A stretch of 64,000 nt of DNA. Source: Mytilus edulis. Taxonomy: Eukaryota. The notes under the pieces were generated by a model. It worked only from the letters and a program-made list of their open reading frames with translations, had not been told where the DNA came from and ran no database searches. Shown piece by piece: positions 1 through 12,269 of the stretch (position 1 is its first letter; each line of letters begins with the position of its first letter). Made by a program: the position numbers and the translations under genes. The stretch lies in contig NC_092344.1 in NCBI RefSeq assembly GCF_963676685.1, forward strand, positions 60,388,001-60,452,000, written 5' to 3'.

Positions 1-685
1 TTTCATTTGCGCACATTGACATTTTTTAATTTGCGCCAAATTGATTCGAAAGGTTAGGTCTGATAAATTTAGATGATAAAATTTAACTTGTTTAACCAAA
101 CGCAGCAATTCAATGAACACAAGCTACAATATAGATAAATGTGTGTATAGACACATGTTGAGCTCATGGGTATCATCATTTAATCACACTTCTGGTACCC
201 GAACATTTACTTTCATATATGGAACCGATGCCATAAAGAAAAAAACAGGCTTTAACTTATAAAAATTTTGATAAAAAAGGGGATGCTTTATTGTAGGGAA
301 GATATCACAAGGTTGCAGTTCAACAGAAGTGTTGCATGACAATACTCAGTTAAAACAGATTTGTGCATATGCAAATGTGCTTTTTATGTCAAACTGTTAC
401 AATCTTATTTTATAAAGTGCTACTTCAAGTGTGATGTACACTTGCAATAAACTTATCCTGCTTTCAGTCCCCCTCCTCCTCCTCGTCACGTGTGAGCAAG
501 TGGCAGGTGGCAAAAGGCCAGAAGGAATATTTTTGTTATTATATAAATAAATTCTATACATCTTATATGCCTCATTACTTGTGTTTACCTGTTAATTTGT
601 GCAAATGAAGAAAATAAATTTGGCGCAAAGAAATAAAAAAAAATAGGCGCTAATTAAGTGCAGATTGGCGCAAATGGAAAAAGCC
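1..685. mobile_element. Degenerate TIR element (MITE-like); left end probably just outside the window
   Basis: TTTCATTTGCGC...AATTTGCGCCAAATT at 1-42 is mirrored by AATTTGGCGCAAA...TTGGCGCAAATGGAAAAAGCC at about 617-685; no ORF. Confidence 0.5.
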
Positions 686-859
686 GAATCAAATATAATC
701 TTTTCTCGTATCAAGATTTCAAGATGTTATTCATAACCTCAGACACATACTTGTATACAAGAGGACAATAATATATACAACCATATTAAGATAATACATA
801 GCGAGACAGGACAAACGAAACACAAATACATAGTATATTTTAAAAGACAATTGGTATAA

Positions 860-1255
860 TTAGATTAAGTATTTTATGATTTTCTTCACGAAAATTGATA
901 ATTTCCTTTGAACTTGTACGTTACATATAGACAACAAGCCAGTGAATTTCTTCTTGCTTGGATTCATTACATAGTAATTTGGTACAAACTTTGATCTAAG
1001 AGCAGAAACATCAGCATTTTTACAGGTAAACAATATATGAAACTCATCCCCTATTCCCTCATTACATAATGTACATATTCTATTTTCCCTCGCGATCCCC
1101 GCCCATCTACCCGTCTCAATAGGTAACTTCAAATTCGAGCATCGAAGTTCAGATATGTAATATCTGTCCTTGGGTAATAATCGCAATAGATACGGTTCCA
1201 AACCAAACTCGAGTTTGAATTAATAAAGAATAGAATTCACCCCTATCAGATCAAA
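860..1255 (-). mobile_element. 3' fragment of an RTE-X-like non-LTR retrotransposon ORF2 (C-terminal zinc knuckle)
   Basis: LRCSNLKLPIETGRW..RENRICTLC..IGDEFH..FTC, homologous to the C-termini at 22393-22750 and 26221-26619; a broken upstream piece reads DRGEFYS/FKLEFGLEP. Confidence 0.85.
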
Positions 1256-1390
1256 TTGGTGTTTTCTTTCTTTTTTTCGTTCAGTTTCATCTAGTCCATT
1301 TGTTCATTTGACTCTGTCTCCATCACGACTAGGATGCATTTTAATTTATAATGTAAGTCGTTCAGGTTTTTGTTTTATTATATAAAAAAA

Positions 1391-1490
1391 AAGAAGATAT
1401 AGCATGATTGCCAATGAGACAACTCTCTAAAAGAGACAAAGTGACACCGGAATTAACTATTAAAAAAAACCTTTAACAGATCACGGTACG
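1391..1490 (+). repeat. Dispersed repeat family A (fragment)
   Basis: AGAAGAT..ATGATTGCCAATGAGACAAC core recurs at about 13665, 21098, 54261 and 58120. Confidence 0.75.
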
Positions 1491-3119
1491 CTGACGGTAC
1501 AGATGTCTGTAAATTCAGAAATTAATGCGAGGTTTTTATTATTGCGACAATAATTAAGACTCGCATTTTGAAGCATTGCGTTTGAATTTTTTCTTAATCG
1601 TTGTATTCAAAATCTCATTTCAGGCTATAATGACACTCATCGCATTAAATATTTATCAATTGCACGCAACAAATTTATATTCAAAAGACTATGAATTTGA
1701 TGTAAATTTGACAAGATTAGTTCGTTTAAGTTGCTAAAAATTCTATAATTAGTGTATTATTCTCCCAAGTTTATTTGAAAAGGTATAATTCCTCTATACA
1801 AATGGCAAAATCTTTCATAAAATATCCAGTAAGTTGGATAAACGTTTACCAAATCATCCCAATACAGTTTGATTTATATATTCACTTTGCTATTCCGTTC
1901 TTGCACAGTGATATAGTTCATTTTGCGTCATCCCATATTCTAGCAAAGGGAGATTATCTCAGCATCACCGTTACATTAGTAATAGCTGTCGTACATAAAA
2001 TAGTTAGCTCGAACTGTATGATCCTGTGTGAATCTGATCTTTATATTAAAAGTGCATAAATGGTTCACATATGGGTCTTATTTAAACATTAAACAGTATC
2101 AAAACAATTAGTGCATTATAATATAACCAAATAGGCATGCAAAAAAGAATCAATAGGCAAAATATGCTTGTCTACCGTCTAATTCTAATTGCTAATATTT
2201 ACTGTATTGTACATAGCTCAATTCCATTCCATTCCATTCAATTTTATTTATTTTTTAATTTTCAGCAGAAAACAGTATTTCTAACAATTAAATTGAATTA
2301 ATTTGATATGACGTTGACACACGGTAATCACTCTCATGTTTTTATTTACATCGCTGTCAATCATCCGGTAAAGATGAATATTCATTACTACCCTCGGTAG
2401 TTAACGTCCCTCGATGGTTAACTTTAAGTGCCTACCGTATAGTTTATAGTCACTCAGACCTTTAAATTTCTTCTAAGAGAAATCTATCACTCATTAATTA
2501 ATCTACCAGAGTAAAAAGAAGATAATAAGATAATTGCACATGCAGGTATTTTTTGTTGAAAAGGTGCAATTTGGTTACTGAGTACAATTTTGGTACTGTG
2601 ATGTTATATCATAAGTGTGTATTGCTAAATAGGTTGAAATGTGAACCTGATAGTGATATAGTGATAAAGTACTTGGTAGAGTAAAAATGTTTTGATCAGG
2701 GATAAACTGATGCATAAAATATGCAGGTGACTGCTGCAGCTTGAATTTTAAAGGATGTAGCCCACATTCTTCCAAGTAACATGCCCTGTATATACCTATC
2801 ATGGACAGTGGTTTATTCTCATGGGTTATCATATTAATAACTCCATCTTCCCATACAATCCAATTTTGGACAATATTGAAGCATACAATATATACAGTAG
2901 TCAGTTCTAAATGTACTACTCAGACTCAAGTCTCCTTTTATGATTAAACTTAGAGAGAGAAAACAAAACAGTTTCCATTTCCTGGGACTGTATAAGGTGT
3001 GACATAATCAATGAAAAGATGTCTTGAGAGTTTGCCATTTAGGAAGTACAGAATTAGAAGATTGTGTATTATTTGAATGTTTTAACTTTTGTTAAGTTTT
3101 GAATTAGTCTGTGGGCTAC

Positions 3120-3246
3120 CATAGGATCCAGAGGGAGACCCTTTTCTTGGGAAAAAAATGATGATTATATAGGGAATAACTGAAGCATGACTGGAGCGCA
3201 CCGTCACCCTCCCCCCCTTTTATGAAAAATGCTGGATTCGCCATTG
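3120..3246. mobile_element. CAG/GGCGGATCC-type MITE, degenerate (hAT5-like 5-bp TSD)
   Basis: Ends CATAGGATCCAG and CTGGATTCGCCATTG; flanks GCTAC/ACTAC; interior homologous to 12270 and 20066. Confidence 0.65.
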
Positions 3247-3894
3247 ACTACAAGAATAACCGTGATCACATTCAACTGTATAATTATCACTGTTCCTTGG
3301 TGTGGGGAATAATGATATGTGGCAGATGAACATAAGGAGTCATGGTCAACCAGTGCACCGGAGTTTGCCCGGCATGGCCAATTTGTAAAAAAAAATGCGA
3401 AATGTATTGCTTGTAGCATTTTTTTCTTTGTTCCCATGGCTGGACGGAACTTTTACGCTAAATATGTTATCGTTAATTATGATTTTGTGACTTTTGAATG
3501 AAGTACCTGTGATTATTTAGGACATTTGCTTTGACCTCACTGATAATGGAATGTTGAAGCAGACGAAACATGGCGTCAGATGTTGTTGTCATAACTTCGG
3601 TAATTTCCGTGGTACAATAAAATTCAAATAAGCTACACAAGTAGCCAACATTTCTGAATTCTTGTTTTTGAAAACAAATGAAAATTCATGTCGTATTTAA
3701 CATAGAAATTATTCCGATCTGTCCCGTTTTTTCAAGATCGCGTTAAAACGTTAACTTCGGCCGCCATTAAAAAAAATAATCGTACGAGATTTAGCGAGAG
3801 TGACGAAACTTTTCAGATGGGTCGTCTAGAAAGAGTTATCGTTCTTTGTCCCAAAACGATGCTTCTACCATAAGTGCCAGCATAGCTGGCATAT

Positions 3895-4279
3895 AAATAA
3901 AGTGTATTTACTTTCAATTCGTAGTTTAGTAATCGATCCATGGTTGTCAATTGACATAGTATACAGACCCTCTCCATTTAATAAACTCTGGACAGAATTA
4001 AAATACACTTTATTCGTACTATTCGTTTGTTCAAAGTATACAGAAAAACGCAAACCGGAAGTATAATCTGACTTAAAATTTCGTCCAATGACGGGACAAT
4101 ATCCGGATGCCTTTTTTCTCGTTTTTCTCCCAAAATAACTCAATCTGAATAATCATATGAATGGATGACAAATGCGACTATGCACTGTATATATAGGACA
4201 CAGAGTCGTGTTGATTAATTTATTGTGGAAAGAAGAGAAGCGACACCAAAAATGAGGTCTTCTCGTTTAATAGTATAGA
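3895..4279 (-). mobile_element. 5' portion of a non-autonomous Helitron-like element
   Basis: Minus strand begins A|TCTATACTATTAAACGAGAAG, a typical Helitron 5'-TC terminus; no 3' CTAG/hairpin found, so the left boundary is approximate. Confidence 0.5.
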
Positions 4280-4690
4280 TTTGATAAATAAGTTAATAAC
4301 ATTTTACGATAGAGAAAACCAAATATATTTGTGTAACACTCGATAAAAGTTTACAATCTTTAACTTAAAATTTGAGTTATCTGGCACCATCTGGCACACT
4401 ACAAGCGCATCACATTATTTTCTGCAAACACTCTACTTCGGAATAATGTAATTTTCATAATCGCATATTTCCCGATTTCCAAGTTCATACTCAACAAAAC
4501 TAAAAATAAGCTTGCCCTCTTTCCGAATGCAGTTAATTTTCTTATGTCATTCTGTTAAATATGGACCAATGTTTTCGATCTTTTCAGCGTTGTTCTTCGT
4601 TTATTGAACAGAAACAGGTGTTGTTATTCATGTGGCGATTCACAAATAACCACGGGAGTTTCCGTGTTTATTTACATTGGTAGGTATAAG

Positions 4691-4713
4691 CATAGATGTA
4701 ATACCCATCTACG
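4691..4713. mobile_element. 23-bp palindromic micro-insertion with 7-bp TSD (P-element-like ends)
   Basis: GTATAAG|CATAGATGTAATACCCATCTACG|GTATAAG. Confidence 0.8.
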
Positions 4714-5151
4714 GTATAAGACAATCGATATGAAATCACGTGATAAGACCAGCTTCAGTTAAAAGAACAGGCGAAGGCGGCATCACAGATACCCACAAAG
4801 GAGTTATATATATATCACGTACTTGACAAACTGAGTCGGAACCTTTTATTTTCTTAAAGAAATCAGTGGGATGGGAATGTGCTAATTTTTCGTTGGAGTT
4901 CCTGTCAATATAATACTTCCATGATCAACCAACATATAGGACACAGGCCATTTTGAATTTTGGCGGCCGTTATGGATTTCTTTCAGATGGATCCATATCC
5001 CAAAATTTGTATTATCATCATATCTTAAAATGTGCAAAGTTTCAATCTTTTACCATAAAGTGATCAATTGTGCCAAAATATTGGACATAACCGCTGGGTT
5101 GTAAGTAACCAGCAACCCTCTCTATCAAGGAAATTGTGATAGGTAATGCAT

Positions 5152-5226
5152 TTCGGCTGTTGTCTGCTCTATGGTCGGGTTGTTGTCGCTTTGACACATT
5201 CCCCATTTCCTTTCTCAATCTTATTC
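5152..5226. repeat. Dispersed repeat family B (fragment)
   Basis: GGTCGGGTTGTTGTC.CTTTGACACATTCCCCATTTCC core shared with 13015-13193, about 14335-14441 and 55527-55786. Confidence 0.8.
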
Positions 5227-5388
5227 TATGGAATATCGTATGGGAGATATAAACTACATACGCAGGCACTGCTGGAGTGTGCTGCATGTATATTAAAAAT
5301 TCACAATTAGGAAGCTGAGACCACTCTTTGTGTCCTAAAGTTTGTTCTCAACCAACCTGTATCACTAATGGCTAGATATCAGTTGAGG

Positions 5389-5411
5389 CATAGATGTAAT
5401 ACCCATCTATG
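5389..5411. mobile_element. 23-bp palindromic micro-insertion with 7-bp TSD (second copy)
   Basis: GTTGAGG|CATAGATGTAATACCCATCTATG|GTTGAGG; perfect 8-bp inverted ends. Confidence 0.85.
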
Positions 5412-5801
5412 GTTGAGGCAACTTGACTATGTTAAGAACATCTTTTATTTCAATAATATTTTGTGTAATAAAATTTATAATATTTAAATACTGTTTAGTA
5501 TAGAAAAATTTATTTTGTACTGATGATGGTTATTCAGCTCACGGTATTTGGCGCCGAAGTATCCCTCTACGACGAGGGGGATTTTTAACGACAATGACTA
5601 CCCATGAGGGCCTTGCACGATCGGTAATATATAAATTATCTTGTATGTAAACAAGGTAGCAATAAAAATCATATTCTAGGACATAAAGTCAAATAAATGA
5701 TGTACTATATTGTACTAGGTATGTATGCAGACATATTTCAAGATAGAAACTATACATATATTATATATATTCTGTCAATTTACAGACAATTTAATTGCTT
5801 G

Positions 5802-7959
5802 TGTAACAGTACATAGTTTATGTTATCCCTCCTCTATATTTTAGGGATGAGTGCATGCACAGTATCTGTAATCTATGTCCCTAGCATGAAGGAATGTTGA
5901 CAAATACAATTTCAAGTTGTATAAAAGATATATATCATGGTTTTTTTTTATTAATAATTAATAAAACCTAAGACATCGGAGTAAGTATTGTAATGTAAAA
6001 TTATGTTTTATATTGCTATTGTTCAATTTATGAATATAAGGTATAGATTGTTGATGCTTTGAATTATAAAAGTAGATTTTCCATGACTTTTGGACAATCT
6101 AACTATTTCAGATATTATCATATATTATAGGTATCCATATGTTGTTATCAAGAAGGGTAATTGTGTTGCTTAATTCCACAATGACTGTTCTATAATTTAT
6201 TAGTCAGTACAAGTTAGAGATAAACAAATTTGTGACAATTTATATCATAAGGAAAATTTAATTATGTATTTGGGGACAAATGGCAGATGCTACATTAGTT
6301 TATGAGTATGTGATGGTCAAGTATTGGACACACAAGATTAGATATAATTAAACAATAATCGTATACATCTGTTCATCACGTCTATAATTCGGAATTTTAT
6401 CAGTAGTGGTCGTGACATCAAAGATAATTGAATAATCAGTAATTACAATAGAAACTATAAAAGCCTCGGTTTACAATTTGTGTTCAATTTGAACACTTAT
6501 TGCATTCTAGGTAAGTTTGAAATAATTTGAAATAAACTATTTATTCTTAAGATAATTTCTTAAAGTTAAATTTATTTATTTTTCATTAAGGACAGTTTTG
6601 AGATCATAAGTACTGTATTTGTTATAACTGCTTTATTATATTAAGAAAAACTAAAAATGTATGTTTCATTTTTATTAATGTTTTCAAGTTACAAATACTT
6701 TGGAAAAAAACAATGTGTAAAATATTATCTAATATTGTAATATTTTTCACTTTATTCTTCATTAAACAATTCGAACACTTATTGTATTCTAGCTTTTTAT
6801 GTTGCTGATTCCGGCCTATCTACCAATTGATTGTGAGTTTGTTTCCCCCTTATTGCGACATACGTCAATACTTTAGCAAGGATTATAAAACACAATAACA
6901 ATTAATTTTGTCACAATAGAATGGTGCAGGATGTTTAAAGCGACAGGAAGACCTACAAAACCAGGAAAAACACCTCTAAATTACAGTAAAGAGGCATAAC
7001 ACCATAAGCTAGATACAGCGTTTCATCAATTGAACATTTTGCCAGGAGAGGAGCAATTCGTACTTAAACGCCGTTTCGAAAATAAAATTCCTGAACGTGA
7101 GGACACCACAATACTATAGTTATATGAACTTGTTCACACAAGGATTATAAAACACAATTACGTCCAAGACCCGTGGACTCTTCCTCCTCAATACAGTGAC
7201 CAACCAACTGGATCTGTTCCTGATCATAACCCGTTCATACCTTCAAGTGTCTCAACTCCAACCAAGCCATTACAACCAACACGGTTGGTTCGACCCAAAA
7301 TTCCACAAGCCTTCCTGACGCATTCTACAGGGACATCAACACCTGGACCAGTGCAACAACCGTATCCCGGAACTCCATTACTGGTAAATAAACTTTCATT
7401 GCCTGCTTTACAGACGCCGTCCCATTTTTCTTCAAACACGGCACCAGCAGCCATAGCAATTGTGACAGCAGCCACTACAGTGCCATCTTCCTCTGCATCT
7501 TCAATACCAATTTCAACGACCTCTGCACCACCACCAGCAACAACAACATCCACCGCTTCAGCAGCTATTTCAGCAGGTAGGACATCAATACCACCTATGA
7601 ACATTTTTAACATGTCTTCTTCTTTAAAGATTGCAAAATTCAAGGATGATAATTCTAAAAACCCTGAAACTTGGCTGAACACTTTTAAACAATACTGTTC
7701 TTTTTATGATTTAACTAAGCAAAAGAGTGCAGAGTCATTCCCCTTCCATTAATTTGGAAGACCATGACAGAATTTGTTATGACACAGTTTCGGCCACAAA
7801 AAAATCTAATTTTGATGAATTTATCTCTGTTTTTAAAGAGAGATTTTGTTTTTAAAGAGAGATTTAAAGACAAACAACATCTGTTGGATCTGACAATATT
7901 ACAAACTCACCAAGGAAGGACTGTAGCAAGGATTATAAAACACAATAACAATTGTCACA
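5802..7959 (+). mobile_element. Decayed Ty3/Gypsy-like LTR retrotransposon remnant
   Basis: Candidate LTR TGTAACA(5802)...GTCACA(6915), then PBS-like TGGTGCAG and a gag-like ORF; the LTR 3' end is repeated at 7924-7959; no TSD found. Confidence 0.5.
7285..7920 (+). pseudogene. Truncated, frameshifted retrotransposon gag
   Basis: Pro/Ser/Thr-rich stretch, then KIAKFKDDNSKNPETWLNTFKQYCSFYDL..FPFH (Gypsy capsid N-terminal pattern); stop or frameshift, then FKERFKDKQHLLDLTILQ. Confidence 0.6.
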
Positions 7960-10390
7960 ATATAAGTGTTCTTTGCATAGAAAATAATTGCGTTTATTAT
8001 ATAACGTATATACATGTATGTGTATATAAAGAATATCAGTACTTATTAATATATTCCATCCAGTGTAATGTCAAGGAGAGTGATGCAATGAAATTGTTAT
8101 TTCTAATACTGCAGATGTAACGGGGTTCTTCGTTGGCACTGGTTTCATAAAACACAATATCGTATAATATTATATCGTATCTTATACATGTTGGTTTTTT
8201 TCAGATAAACAAGTTCATATAACTATAATTACTTGCTTAGACAGCAACAGGTCAATTCGCTATATTCATGATATTCGTTCTCTACTTTCTCGCATGTCAA
8301 CAATCTAGAACTGTTATCTTCCTTCTAGCGCATCGAATACCTCGTCGATATGCTACTGTTGGGCAGTGAGCCAGGATCCATGCAGGCTGCATCCTTCTCA
8401 CACATCAATATATCATTCACCTCTCCATGCTCTTGACTACACAACTTTGGAACAGAAAATACACAAACAAGTTACACAAGGAACAAACAAAGCTACATGG
8501 CTTGCAATAAAAATTGAAGGCGGTAAAACAGCTGAATCATACATTATGTAACGGTCAATCAGACTGTCGGCTAGCCTAAAGTTCATCAAAACAATTAACC
8601 TAAAACTATTCAACAACAGTGAACCTATAACAACTATAACCTTATCAACTGACAGGCTATCGTCAATCAAAAAACTTAATTACAGATAAAGATAAAATCT
8701 ATAAAATTACGGTTCCATGACAATTTCTACTAAACTGAATAAGAAAAAGTGTGAACATGTTAGTTCGTAGCGTCAAATGCAATGGCCCTCTACAACTCAG
8801 GCGCAAATACAATTTCAAGTTGTATGGTCATTTCCTAAAAAATGTACAAAATATAATTTCTACTTTTTAAACTTTTATTTATTAAATATCTGAAAGTGAA
8901 ATTTTTGTTTATAAATATTCTTTTTATATTAACTTAGGGACTGCTCATATGTAACCTGAAGAGCGGAAATAACAGGATTTAAAAGATTGGGGGAATGGAA
9001 AGGGGGAATTCAATTTTTCAATACTTCAGAGAAGGCATCGAAAAAAATAATTGCTTCATTTTTGCAATTCTATATTTCAAACATTATAAGCGTCTTACAC
9101 TTGATTTTGATGTCATATACATATAACAATTGTTTCACATTATTTTTGCAAACCTCATCTCAATGTGAAATGTTTTGTTTGTCTTGGTCATGCTGCTGCC
9201 ATCTTCTGTGGCGTTTGTAATATGTCTTAACGGAAAGTTTCCTCAATGCCCGGAGGATACGGAATCGGGACAATCCAAAACCAACTTTTCATTTTACAAT
9301 AATAAAAAAAAAAGGAGAAGAAAATATAATTTAAGAGAGAAACTTCAAATTAAAACAATCATTTATTGTTGTCGTCTTGCTCCGCTCGTCTATAGTCTTT
9401 CCAAAAAAAATACGTTTCAACATGAAATTCCAGGAAATATTTTTTTCTCAAATTGATCTAATTAAACAGTACTAACTCTTATTAAAAAAATCAAGCTATA
9501 GGTATAATGTGCTGAAATTAAAAGAATGTGACTGTGGAAAATGTCAATGAGACCATAACAAGATTATCTAAATAAAGTTCCCTGTAGTCACAAACTGCGG
9601 TACCTCACTTGAAGATGTATTTCCAATACTGATGTTCTATTTTACTGAATAATAATATAAATAATATACATGGTATTTTAGTTGAAAGAAAGTATTTAAA
9701 CTTGTTGGGCCAGGGGTGAAAGTTTCAGGTCTTTGCCGATGAAGCGGGTATGAGCTTTCTTGAATTTATTTGCCTCCTTCAAGGTGGGAACATGTTTCCT
9801 ACCATCCCTCCTCCCCCCCCCCAAAAAAAAAATTGATGATTACCAATCCCATAGATTTCCTCTTCTTTATTCGTTCTTGCGCTTATCCGTTAAATCTAAC
9901 AAGTAACTATTAAATGGAAATAAGAGAAGAGAAAACGACTGTTATTGTTCGATTGATGGTGGCTAATCCTGTGATTTATGCATATGAACAAGTCGGAAAA
10001 CAGTTGGATATTTTAATTGTTTAAAGATGTCTTACATCGACATATTTCTAGGTCGAAATTAACACTAAACGGAGAAAAATTAGTGGACAAGTATTGTAAT
10101 TTCTGTGGATCAACAGATAAAATATATTGCATTAATTACTTGGATATATTCATTATAAACAGAATTATACACTCTCTTATTATATTATTTGCACAATAGG
10201 TGTGTGACTTTTTCACGCGGAAAAATTTAATTACCTGAATGTGTGTACACTGTAATTACACTAGAGAAATAATGCAATTACAGTAATTTCATTTAAGTTG
10301 TCACCTTTGACACTTTATATCTCAATGCAATTATAGATATCGAGTAATTGGTGCCAATCAAGACTTAAATTATGCAAATATCCCGAGGTC

Positions 10391-10470
10391 ATTTCCATGG
10401 TAACAAGTGATGCTGTACCGCGTGTAGAATATCATTTATCATCAAGGTGTACAAGAAGTTAGAGGTAAGT
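10391..10470 (+). promoter_or_regulatory. RFX X-box-like palindrome followed by a consensus splice donor (possible first exon)
   Basis: ATTTCCATGGTAAC (13/14 match to GTTNCCATGGNAAC) at 10391-10404; AG|GTAAGT at 10463-10470. Confidence 0.3.
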
Positions 10471-11634
10471 TATTTTTGTTTGATCTACAAACACGAATAC
10501 ACAAGGGTGGGGTGATAGGTTAATAAATTAATAAACAAATATTTTTTGTAGTTTTCAGCAAGCGAAATGTATAGAATACAAATATAGATCTGTATAGCGC
10601 TGCACAAAACATGATGAATAAGATTTTATCAGTAAAAATTTAGTTTTGAACAATTTAAGATAATAACGAATGCATTAGTTAAATTTTGTTATTTTACTAA
10701 ATACATTAATGATTGCACATTTTATTTTTTTATTTTTTATCTTTATTAATTTAATAATTCTATACTTTAATTTGCACTGTTAGCTTCACTATGAGTGTAC
10801 ATAGGAAGTACGATAGTTTTAAAATTATATATATATGTACATGTATTTAAAAAGAAGGTTGTAACATCATAATAAAACCACAATTGACAAAATAATAACA
10901 TGTATATTTACACATTTAGATCTGATATTTAGTGGAATTTTATGTTTGTCACATGAAAACGTGTGTAATGTATTGCTTTTACACGTGTTGCAATATACAC
11001 ACTTCTAACGTCCGGTTGGTACATGTACTTGTATGGATTTTATACATATTCAACAGATTTAAGGACTTGTTTGTACCTGAAGATAAAGCTGTTACTAAGA
11101 TGTAACAGAGCGACACACTGATTTATTTAAAGATATGAAAATATTACTCAGTTGTCTGTTTTTCAACAACAAAAAGTGACATATATATTGATTCTGAAAG
11201 GAATATAAAGGAAGGTCGTTAAAAATTTATTTGGAAAAATAAACATGTAACATGTGTTTCGGTTTGTTATTCATCAAATTTTTTTATAGAATTTCTTCTA
11301 TTTTATCAGAATATTTTATATAGATAATTTATAGAAATATGGCCTTTAATTTGTCCGACAAAGAACATGAGAAATAATGCGAAGGACACTTTACATAGAA
11401 CACCTTTAGGTGGCATTTTTCTTCTCTCTCTCGGGGACAAAAAAATAAAACTTAAAATCAAAAACTCACTTTTTCAATAGCATACAGCATATACAGGAAC
11501 AAGATTGCAAAGTAAACTATAATTGTATTTGTCCATACTAAATTTACTTTAGAAACCAACTATTTTTTATCACATCCCTTTTTTGCTCCTGAAACAAAAC
11601 TAACATATTTAAAGAAATCAAACCATTTTTTTTT

Positions 11635-11693
11635 TAGTCTCGATTACCCAGACGCATATTTAAATATAGCGTCTGGGGTGATTAACCAGACTG
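11635..11693. mobile_element. Short hairpin MITE with TAGTCT-type ends
   Basis: TAGTCTCGATTACCCAGACGC...GCGTCTGGGGTGATTAACCAGACT; related copy at about 15394-15453. Confidence 0.5.
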
Positions 11694-12269
11694 GTCAAAA
11701 ATTTATAGGGGGCGTAACAAATAGTAATTAAATATAGAACATATCTATAAATAGATTTTCCGTTATCCCCAATATAATTTAAATAAAAAAAGCAACAGTC
11801 AACAGTGTAGTAGTAAATGTACATGACATTCCTGTAGCTCACTCTGTGTTGGCCAACTTGCTGAATGGGAAATTTTAATATCAACGTGAAGTAAAATAAA
11901 TAAAACTGCTCACAAACAATTTCACACGTATTCCTGTTCTCAGAGTTCTTGTCTGAAACTGAGTGATGTATAAAGTTTAACATATAATACAGATCTATAG
12001 AGTCAAAATTAAGCTTTAATTGGCCGTACTTTATATTCAAATTTCGGATATTTTCATCTTTGATAAAAAGTATTTTATATAAGTTTTACTCTTTTTTTGT
12101 CATGGTTTTTATCCAAGACTTGATCATTAACTACTTTTCTAGTTATCGGCCGGTTGTGTCAGCCGTGATTCCCCCGTTACCTGGGTACCGCAGACAGCGA
12201 CACCCAAACGCCTGCCTCTTTTTATTCTGAGGTTTAGTTACGGCCCTATGTAAATACTTCAGCACTCGT

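What the first reader, a model, noticed from the sequence alone, without database searches (positions are those of the whole stretch)
4684..5418. Two 23-bp 'transposons' with P-like ends and exact 7-bp TSDs: minimal MITE or stereotyped excision footprint
Seen: the 23-mer CATAGATG-TAATACC-CATCTA(T/C)G occurs at 4691-4713 and 5389-5411, each between a different exact 7-bp direct repeat (GTATAAG; GTTGAGG), which implies two independent insertions. Established: CATAG-like termini with 7-8-bp TSDs typify the P superfamily, and P transposase makes staggered cuts (17-nt 3' extensions in Drosophila) that leave terminal sequence at the donor site. Inference: this is either one of the smallest mobilisable DNA elements or a reproducible excision scar of an active P-like family. 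The two copies lying about 700 bp apart would fit local hopping.
Basis: partly seen in the sequence, partly recalled or inferred. Interest (0 to 1): 0.85.

Follow-up and report, generated by a model that had tools for sequence, protein, structure and literature searches.

The report
Excision scars of a P-like transposon
The two 23-bp inverted-repeat "mini-transposons" are the scars left when a P-element-like jumping gene cut itself out of a mussel genome, and the same stereotyped scar recurs about 40 times because the broken ends rejoin at a 3-base microhomology.

Summary
The 23-mer lies at 4691-4713 and 5389-5411, each between a different exact 7-bp repeat, and the flanks are unrelated.

Genome-wide there are 44 copies with at most one mismatch; the reversed control gives 0. 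Nearly all sit between their own 7-bp duplications.

They are not micro-MITEs.
- The genome holds about 14 complete, non-coding elements, mostly 1.21 kb, with 29-bp TIRs starting CATAGATGTAATACCCATAGAT and exact 7-bp TSDs.
- It also holds at least 120 short remnants of 19-51 bp that keep up to about 18 nt of each TIR.
- The 23-mer is TIR 1-18 plus the last 5 nt of the other end, overlapping by CAT. This is the best product predicted for annealing the 3' tip of a 17-18-nt overhang.
- The next predicted product, a 28-mer, occurs 21 times.
- Remnants with idiosyncratic filler never recur.
- Laboratory P-element excision in Drosophila gives the same architecture, including a (CAT) junction.

P-superfamily signs are the 7-bp TSD, the CATAG termini, a palindromic T-nn-GTnnnAC-nn-A target like Galileo, and the ~18-nt retention. 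No autonomous copy was found, and the family looks old.

The pair 698 bp apart is improbable by chance (p about 0.01), which fits local hopping or a hotspot.

Other first-stage notes on this genome report similar hairpin scars.

The parts
4684..4690 (+). Left copy of the 7-bp target-site duplication of site 1 (GTATAAG)
   Evidence: identical to 4714-4720. With its upstream T at 4681 it fits the family target motif T-nn-GT.
4691..4713 (+). Excision footprint 1. It consists of TIR nt 1-18 plus the last 5 nt of the opposite TIR, with one later substitution (C at 4712 where the family has T).
4714..4720 (+). Right copy of the TSD of site 1 (GTATAAG)
5382..5388 (+). Left copy of the TSD of site 2 (GTTGAGG)
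5389..5411 (+). Excision footprint 2, identical to the family's modal 23-mer
5412..5418 (+). Right copy of the TSD of site 2 (GTTGAGG)
4279..4923 (.). Copy of a ~645-bp interspersed repeat that hosts site 1. Its paralogues lack 28 nt at the footprint, so they serve as near-empty sites.
   Evidence: 12 or more copies, 87-90% identity over window 4279-4923. (more than 20 copies with a 28-nt shorter span; split matches end at 4686 and resume at 4716).

Best explanation
Both 23-mers are donor-site scars of a cut-and-paste DNA transposon family, most likely of the P superfamily (Galileo/1360-like, 7-bp TSD). An element inserted at each site and duplicated 7 bp. Surviving copies are ~1.2-kb non-coding elements with 29-bp TIRs. 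It was later excised by a transposase that cuts the transferred strand at the element tip and the other strand about 18 nt inside the TIR. This leaves the two flanks with identical, non-complementary 3' overhangs made of TIR sequence. The break was closed by microhomology-mediated (polymerase-theta-type) end joining. The 3'-terminal CAT of one overhang (TIR nt 16-18) paired with ATG (nt 6-8) of the other. The flap was removed and the gap filled, giving TSD + TIR(1-18) + CTATG + TSD. Because this is the best terminal microhomology the two overhangs offer, the same 23-mer arose independently at about 40 sites. Shown: the anatomy, the copy numbers, the TSDs, the full elements, the remnant spectrum and its match to the prediction. 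Inferred: the stagger length, the repair pathway and the identity of the transposase.
For: Copy number and TSDs:
- There are 44 copies of the 23-mer against 0 for the control, with different 7-bp TSDs.

Full elements:
- Full elements with the same termini and exact 7-bp TSDs are 4354, 1380, 1211, 1210, 1222 and 1210 bp long. There are 14 complete pairs genome-wide.
- The family has only about 35 copies or fragments, and no ORF exceeds 81 aa.

Remnant spectrum:
- Remnants run from 19 to 51 bp.
- The longest retained arm is 18 nt in 36 of 51 sites, 17 in 3, 19 in 3 and 22 in 2, and never more.
- The patterns would have allowed longer arms.

Match to prediction:
- For a 17-18-nt overhang the predicted terminal-microhomology products are the 23-mer (best), then the 19-, 28- and 34-mers.
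- Observed: 23-mer about 40 times, 28-mer 21 times, 34-mer and 19-mer present.
- Templated duplications occur in long remnants such as L068 and C7:49113764.

Drosophila parallel:
- P{wa} excision junctions have the same build: TSD, up to 17 nt, microhomology or insert, up to 17 nt, TSD.
- They include recurrent (AT) x14, (TA) x5 and (CAT) x3 classes (PMC2895639 Table 1).
- The 17-nt stagger is a hallmark of P transposase (PMC7776569; PMC10983969).

Target and transposase genes:
- The target motif is T-nn-[GTnnnAC]-nn-A, with T2 at 91% and A6 at 71%. Galileo's 7-bp TSD consensus is GTANTAC (PMC4168063).
- The genome carries at least 47 P-type RNase-H-N transposase matches, many with open frames of 600-930 aa.
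Against: - No autonomous element carrying these TIRs was found. None of the P-type transposase matches lies within 10 kb of a listed TIR, and PF12017 gave nothing.
- The superfamily assignment therefore rests on the TSD length, the terminal CATAG, the target motif and the footprint length.
- The stagger (17, 18 or 19 nt) and the role of polymerase theta are inferred from products only.
- Paralogues of the repeat that hosts site 1 lack 28 nt, not 30.
- Asymmetric footprints show an unexplained bias for the long arm on the left of the + strand (67:39, p=0.008).
- Raw reads could not be consulted.
Confidence: 0.86

Rival explanations
1. Micro-MITE: the 23-bp unit is itself mobilised by a transposase, and its copies descend from one another by transposition.
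For: It has inverted 8-bp ends and 7-bp TSDs, and about 40 near-identical copies at unrelated sites. Two lie 698 bp apart.
Against: The 23-mer holds only 18 and 8 nt of a 29-bp TIR and no subterminal sequence. In P elements the transposase binding sites lie inside the TIRs (PMC7776569). A graded series of other remnants exists. Every recurrent class is a filler-free join predicted from the overhangs, while remnants with idiosyncratic filler are all singletons. The same stereotyped joins arise de novo in Drosophila.
Confidence: 0.03
2. These are real excision scars, but of a cut-and-paste family outside the P superfamily. That would be an undescribed transposase with a 7-bp TSD and a long stagger.
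For: No P-type transposase was found between these TIRs. All surviving copies are non-coding.
Against: The 7-bp TSD with a GTnnnAC palindromic target is as in Galileo. The CATAG terminus fits the CANRG rule (from memory of the Repbase classification). A ~17-18-nt retention is so far known only for P transposase. Many P-type transposase genes are present in this genome.
Confidence: 0.08
3. In-situ deletion without transposase: replication slippage or other microhomology-mediated deletion removed the interior of resident elements.
For: The junctions use short direct repeats (CAT, AT). Internally deleted copies of 85 and 107 bp exist.
Against: Deletion end points would then be scattered along the 1.2-kb element. 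Instead the retained arms stop sharply at 17-19 nt in nearly all of at least 120 remnants, as expected from a fixed cleavage position.
Confidence: 0.02
4. Assembly or sequencing artefact: hairpin-forming palindromic scars were shortened in the consensus.
For: The unexplained + strand bias of arm retention. Raw reads were not available.
Against: The copies carry independent point substitutions and intact TSDs. Perfect 32-40-bp palindromic scars survive in the same assembly. The classes match independent experimental junctions.
Confidence: 0.01

Closest known systems
Drosophila P-element excision footprints (alt-EJ junctions after P{wa} excision; Chan, Yu and McVey 2010, PMC2895639)
   Same: The architecture is TSD + up to 17 nt of the left TIR + microhomology or templated insert + up to 17 nt of the right TIR + TSD. 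A few recurrent microhomology classes dominate, including a (CAT) junction that joins a nearly full arm to the last few nt of the other. Templated insertions are present.
   Different: The TSD is 7 bp instead of 8. The modal arm is 18 nt rather than 17. The TIR sequence is unrelated. These are old, naturally accumulated germ-line relics in a mussel rather than laboratory events, and the transposase is not identified.
Galileo and 1360 (P superfamily, Drosophila)
   Same: 7-bp TSDs with a palindromic target: GTANTAC in Galileo, T-nn-GTnnnAC-nn-A here.
   Different: Galileo has very long foldback TIRs and known transposase-coding copies. This family has 29-bp TIRs and only non-coding copies in the assembly.
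BuT5, the ~1-kb non-coding MITE partner of a divergent P element (PMC3698922)
   Same: A ~1-kb element without coding capacity, presumably mobilised in trans by a P-type transposase (abstract).
   Different: The host group and sequence differ, and I did not compare the TSDs or ends. The link to a master element is shown for BuT5 but not here.
[quoted passage not shown]
   Same: Short, with inverted ends, flanked by TSDs and present in multiple copies.
   Different: There is no evidence that the short form moves. It lacks most of the TIR and all subterminal sequence, and its abundance is explained by recurrent repair.
Polymerase-theta signature at transposon excision sites in natural C. elegans isolates (PMC4490562)
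   Same: Natural genomes record error-prone end joining at transposon-induced breaks (abstract only).
   Different: Those are Tc1/mariner breaks with short overhangs. Here long P-type overhangs give TIR-derived hairpin scars.

Membership tests
P superfamily of DNA transposons | 7-8-bp target-site duplication | tested here: met
   Exact 7-bp TSDs at 6 of 6 fetched full elements and at most footprints.
P superfamily of DNA transposons | Termini 5'-CANRG (rule recalled from the Repbase classification, not checked in a paper here) | tested here: met
   All elements begin CATAG and end CTATG.
P superfamily of DNA transposons | Autonomous member encodes a THAP/RNase-H P-type transposase | tested here: inconclusive
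   The genome has 47 PF21787 matches, but none lies near a TIR of this family. PF12017 gave no match anywhere, controls included. Loci could no longer be fetched.
P superfamily of DNA transposons | Staggered donor cleavage about 17 nt inside the TIR, leaving TIR-derived 3' overhangs on the flanks | tested here: met
   Indirect. Retained arms pile up at 18 nt (17-19) and almost never exceed this. The product spectrum matches a 17-18-nt overhang model. Biochemical mapping was not possible.
P superfamily of DNA transposons | Palindromic target-site motif centred on the TSD | tested here: met
   T-nn-GTnnnAC-nn-A from 55 sites, compared with Galileo GTANTAC.
MITE (the 23-mer as a mobile unit) | The short form itself is transposed, so copies share descent, including idiosyncratic variants | tested here: not met
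   The recurrent classes are only filler-free joins predicted by microhomology. About 48 other remnants are singletons.
MITE (the 23-mer as a mobile unit) | Complete TIRs, and usually subterminal transposase-binding sequence, of the parent family | tested here: not met
   The 23-mer holds 18 + 8 (overlapping) nt of a 29-bp TIR.
Polymerase-theta-mediated end joining product | Junctional microhomology at 3' termini and templated insertions | tested here: met
   28 of 51 sites show 1-3 nt of overlap. Templated duplications occur in L068, C7:49113764 and C10:61177841. The enzyme itself is not testable with these tools.

The most novel reading that the evidence does not exclude
The choice of which arm is kept whole would be truly polar along the chromosomes. 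Asymmetric scars keep the long arm on the left of the + strand 67 times against 39, and the 23-mer alone shows 31:12. That would mean the repair of P-type breaks in this mussel is coupled to some chromosome-scale directional process. Separately, the scars would be the first sequence-only read-out of an 18-nt stagger of a lophotrochozoan P-type transposase with no surviving master copy.
Probability: 0.1. Interest if true: 0.7.

Novelty: new member of a known kind. Interest (0 to 1): 0.45.

Why it matters
- The long staggered cut that is the oddest feature of the Drosophila P transposase also seems to operate in a mollusc P-like family. The cut length (about 18 nt) can be read from genome sequence alone.
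- The at least 120 scars outnumber the ~14 complete and ~35 total surviving elements. They form a fossil record of excisions that could measure the turnover of a cut-and-paste family and the spectrum of germ-line end joining in a non-model animal.
- For annotation, tiny hairpins between 7-bp repeats in this genome should be called excision footprints, not miniature transposons.

Tried and rejected
- Local duplication of the two sites: rejected, the flanks are unrelated.
- Tool strand bias: rejected, the reverse-complement pattern gave the exact mirror result.
- Transposase inside the 4354-bp copy L076: none. It is the 1.2-kb element with a 3.1-kb non-coding insert.
- PF12017 search of the genome: no match, but the controls did not ring either, so it is uninformative.
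- Linking TIRs to the 47 PF21787 matches by coordinates: no pair lies within 10 kb.
- Link between footprint orientation and half-site strength of the target: none seen.
- Rfam scan of window 1-12000: nothing. ORFs nearby are short.
- Alternative haplotig for the window region: none in the assembly.
- Exact-flank pattern to read the empty site in paralogues of the host repeat: no match.
I did not try to obtain those letters through another tool.
- The TIR string occurs in no paper of the library.

Full report
**1. Observation**

The 23-mer CATAGATGTAATACCCATCTAYG is at window 4691-4713 and 5389-5411. No match is expected in shuffles. Site 1 is flanked by GTATAAG on both sides and site 2 by GTTGAGG on both sides. 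The 300-bp flanks of the two sites share nothing beyond chance 7-9-mers, so they are not a local duplication.

The window is C1:60388001-60452000 of a 1.37-Gb genome. An earlier follow-up note of this scan calls it a mussel.

**2. Genome-wide copies**

A pattern search of the whole genome finds 44 copies with at most one mismatch and none for the reversed control. The reverse-complement pattern returns the same 44 places. In the 30 fetched loci nearly every copy sits between its own exact 7-bp direct repeat, and the flanks are otherwise unrelated.
- other copies exist genome-wide;
- those copies have 7-bp duplications;
- the two window sites are not one local duplication.

**3. Longer relatives**

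Two longer variants suggested that the true end is longer than 8 nt.
- A search for 13 nt of the end on both sides, up to 30 nt apart, gave 28 short palindrome-like units of 28-51 bp.
- The 18-mer CATAGATGTAATACCCAT occurs 177 times.
- Pairs of hits in inverted orientation mark complete elements. Six were fetched. They are 4354, 1380, 1211, 1210, 1222 and 1210 bp long, each with an exact and different 7-bp TSD.
- The TIR is 29 bp with one mismatch and begins CATAGATGTAATACCCATAGATRAAG.
- The copies are AT-rich, differ by about 12-13%, and have no ORF above 81 aa. The 4354-bp copy is the 1.2-kb element with a 3.1-kb insert.
- Genome-wide there are only about 31 exact full TIR ends, 14 complete elements and about 35 copies or fragments in all.

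**4. The remnant spectrum**

A pattern with 15 nt of one end, 1-30 nt of anything and 8 nt of the other end gives 81 further sites. With the 23-mers this makes at least 120 remnants, several times more than surviving elements.

The recurrent classes are:

| Class | Copies |
|---|---|
| 28-mer (TIR 1-18 + last 10 nt) | 21 |
| 25-mer | 3 |
| 32-mer (first form) | 3 |
| 32-mer (second form) | 2 |
| 24-mer | 2 |
| 40-mer | 2 |

All of these are filler-free joins of a prefix of the TIR to a prefix of the inverted TIR. About 48 other sites are singletons. Many carry filler or templated duplications, for example L068, C7:49113764 and C10:61177841.

In 51 distinct sites with good TSDs held in loci, the longest arm retained is distributed as follows:

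| Longest arm (nt) | Sites |
|---|---|
| 18 | 36 |
| 17 | 3 |
| 19 | 3 |
| 22 | 2 |
| 16 or fewer | 7 |
| more than 22 | 0 |

The fetch patterns favour 18. However, the patterns would have admitted longer arms, and hardly any are seen.

**5. Mechanism**

I modelled two identical 3' overhangs made of the first n nt of the TIR and let the 3' tip of one anneal inside the other.
- For n = 18 the best product, with a 3-nt CAT:ATG microhomology, is exactly the 23-mer. The 2-nt products are a 19-mer, the 28-mer and a 34-mer palindrome.
- For n = 17 the 23-mer is again best.
- The two most frequent observed classes are thus the predicted ones. The 19-mer (L050) and the 34-mer also occur.
- The 28-mer (2-nt microhomology for n = 18, 1 nt for n = 17) is seven times more frequent than the 25-mer (a 1-nt product for n = 17 only). 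This favours 18 nt, but 17-19 cannot be separated by sequence alone.

This is the structure of experimental P-element donor-site repair in Drosophila. P transposase cuts 17 nt inside the TIR and leaves 17-nt non-complementary 3' tails (PMC7776569; PMC10983969). Junctions recovered after P{wa} excision read TSD + up to 17 nt + microhomology or insert + up to 17 nt + TSD. They include recurrent (AT) x14, (TA) x5 and (CAT) x3 classes and templated insertions, and they depend in part on polymerase theta (PMC2895639). The (CAT) class there is the direct counterpart of the 23-mer here.

**6. Superfamily**

From 55 sites the reconstructed target is a palindrome, T-nn-[G T n n n A C]-nn-A. T is at TSD position 2 in 91%, A at position 6 in 71%, and W only at the two outer positions. 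Galileo, a P-superfamily member, makes 7-bp TSDs with consensus GTANTAC inside a 15-bp palindromic motif (PMC4168063).

Four features point to the P superfamily: the CATAG terminus, the 7-bp TSD, this target motif and the ~18-nt retention. The genome holds at least 47 matches to the P-type RNase-H-N domain, many in open frames of 600-930 aa. Membership is therefore likely but lacks the transposase criterion.

**7. Against the micro-MITE reading**

- The 23-mer lacks 11 nt of one TIR, 21 nt of the other and all subterminal sequence.
- In P elements the transposase binding sites lie internal to the TIRs.
- If tiny remnants moved, some idiosyncratic ones should have multiplied. None has.
- The abundance of the 23-mer follows from its microhomology.

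**8. Age**

About as many 23-mers carry one substitution as carry none. For 23 nt this implies roughly 4% decay. TSD pairs differ at about 2-5% of positions, and element copies differ by 12-13%. The family looks old. Nothing suggests present activity.

**9. Context and local hopping**

Site 1 lies in a ~645-bp interspersed repeat (window 4279-4923). More than 20 paralogues span 28 nt less across the site. Split matches stop at 4686 and resume at 4716, with one non-T base between. The paralogues therefore lack the scar and most of one TSD copy, but a clean empty site would lack 30 nt. Perhaps this copy had a private 2-nt deletion that created the correct half-site spacing. Site 2 is in unique sequence.

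Among 119 mapped scars, one pair within 1 kb is expected 0.01 times (p about 0.01). Four pairs lie within 100 kb against 1.0 expected, and three of them involve this neighbourhood, because a 28-mer scar lies at C1:60313500. This fits P-type local hopping, which in flies covers 50-150 kb, or an insertion hotspot.

**10. Unexplained**

Asymmetric scars keep the long arm on the left of the + strand 67 times and on the right 39 times (p = 0.008). The 23-mer alone shows 31:12. The search tool is not biased, and full elements show no such bias. Heterogeneity among chromosomes is not significant (p = 0.085). Orientation is not linked to half-site strength. I have no explanation.

**11. Earlier notes of the scan**

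Two first-stage notes on other windows of this genome describe 34-bp palindromes and tiny hairpins with 7-bp TSDs as possible P/Galileo footprints. They agree with this reading but were not tested here.

**12. Verdict**

The scar reading is right, the mini-transposon reading is wrong, and the P-like assignment is probable. It is a new, well-documented natural instance of a known mechanism.

Noticed in passing
genome-wide: Asymmetric footprints keep the 18-nt arm on the left of the assembly + strand 67 times against 39 (p=0.008). For the 23-mer alone the split is 31:12. Full elements are unbiased, and tool bias was excluded.
   Followed up: partly
window 4684-4720 versus paralogues such as G000:C10:50836349-50836458: Paralogous copies of the host repeat lack 28 nt at site 1 instead of the 30 expected for scar plus one TSD. 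They read GGTA-V-ATAAGAC, where the clean empty site would be GGTATAAGAC.
   Followed up: partly
window 3900-4280: Part of a very young high-copy repeat. At least 28 copies of ~381 bp at 97-99% identity lie on many chromosomes. At C5:42270427-42271605 they form tandem 267-bp units.
   Followed up: no
window 5152-5225: A ~74-bp sequence recurs at 75-96% identity in about fifteen of the unrelated fetched loci, so it is a common short interspersed repeat.
   Followed up: no
G000:C6:89046715-89658119 and seven other places: Ten P-type transposase matches have identical scores and 798-aa open frames, and five are clustered within 0.6 Mb on C6. This looks like a recently amplified P-type family distinct from the one studied here.
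   Followed up: no
G000:C8:37463162-37463223: Two 25-bp footprints of the family lie head to tail (a 47-bp match), possibly from two successive insertion and excision cycles at one spot or from a templated repair product.
   Followed up: no
G000:C1113:30487 and C10:5549831; C1189:9685 and C14:35948386: Unplaced contigs carry the same private variants of footprint or TIR as chromosomal sites. These contigs are probably alternative haplotigs.
   Followed up: no
G000:C8:57052404-57057614: A more divergent copy (73-82% identity) of the 1.2-kb element is split by about 3.9 kb of unknown sequence. It is a candidate for a longer relative, but no PF21787 match lies there.
   Followed up: no
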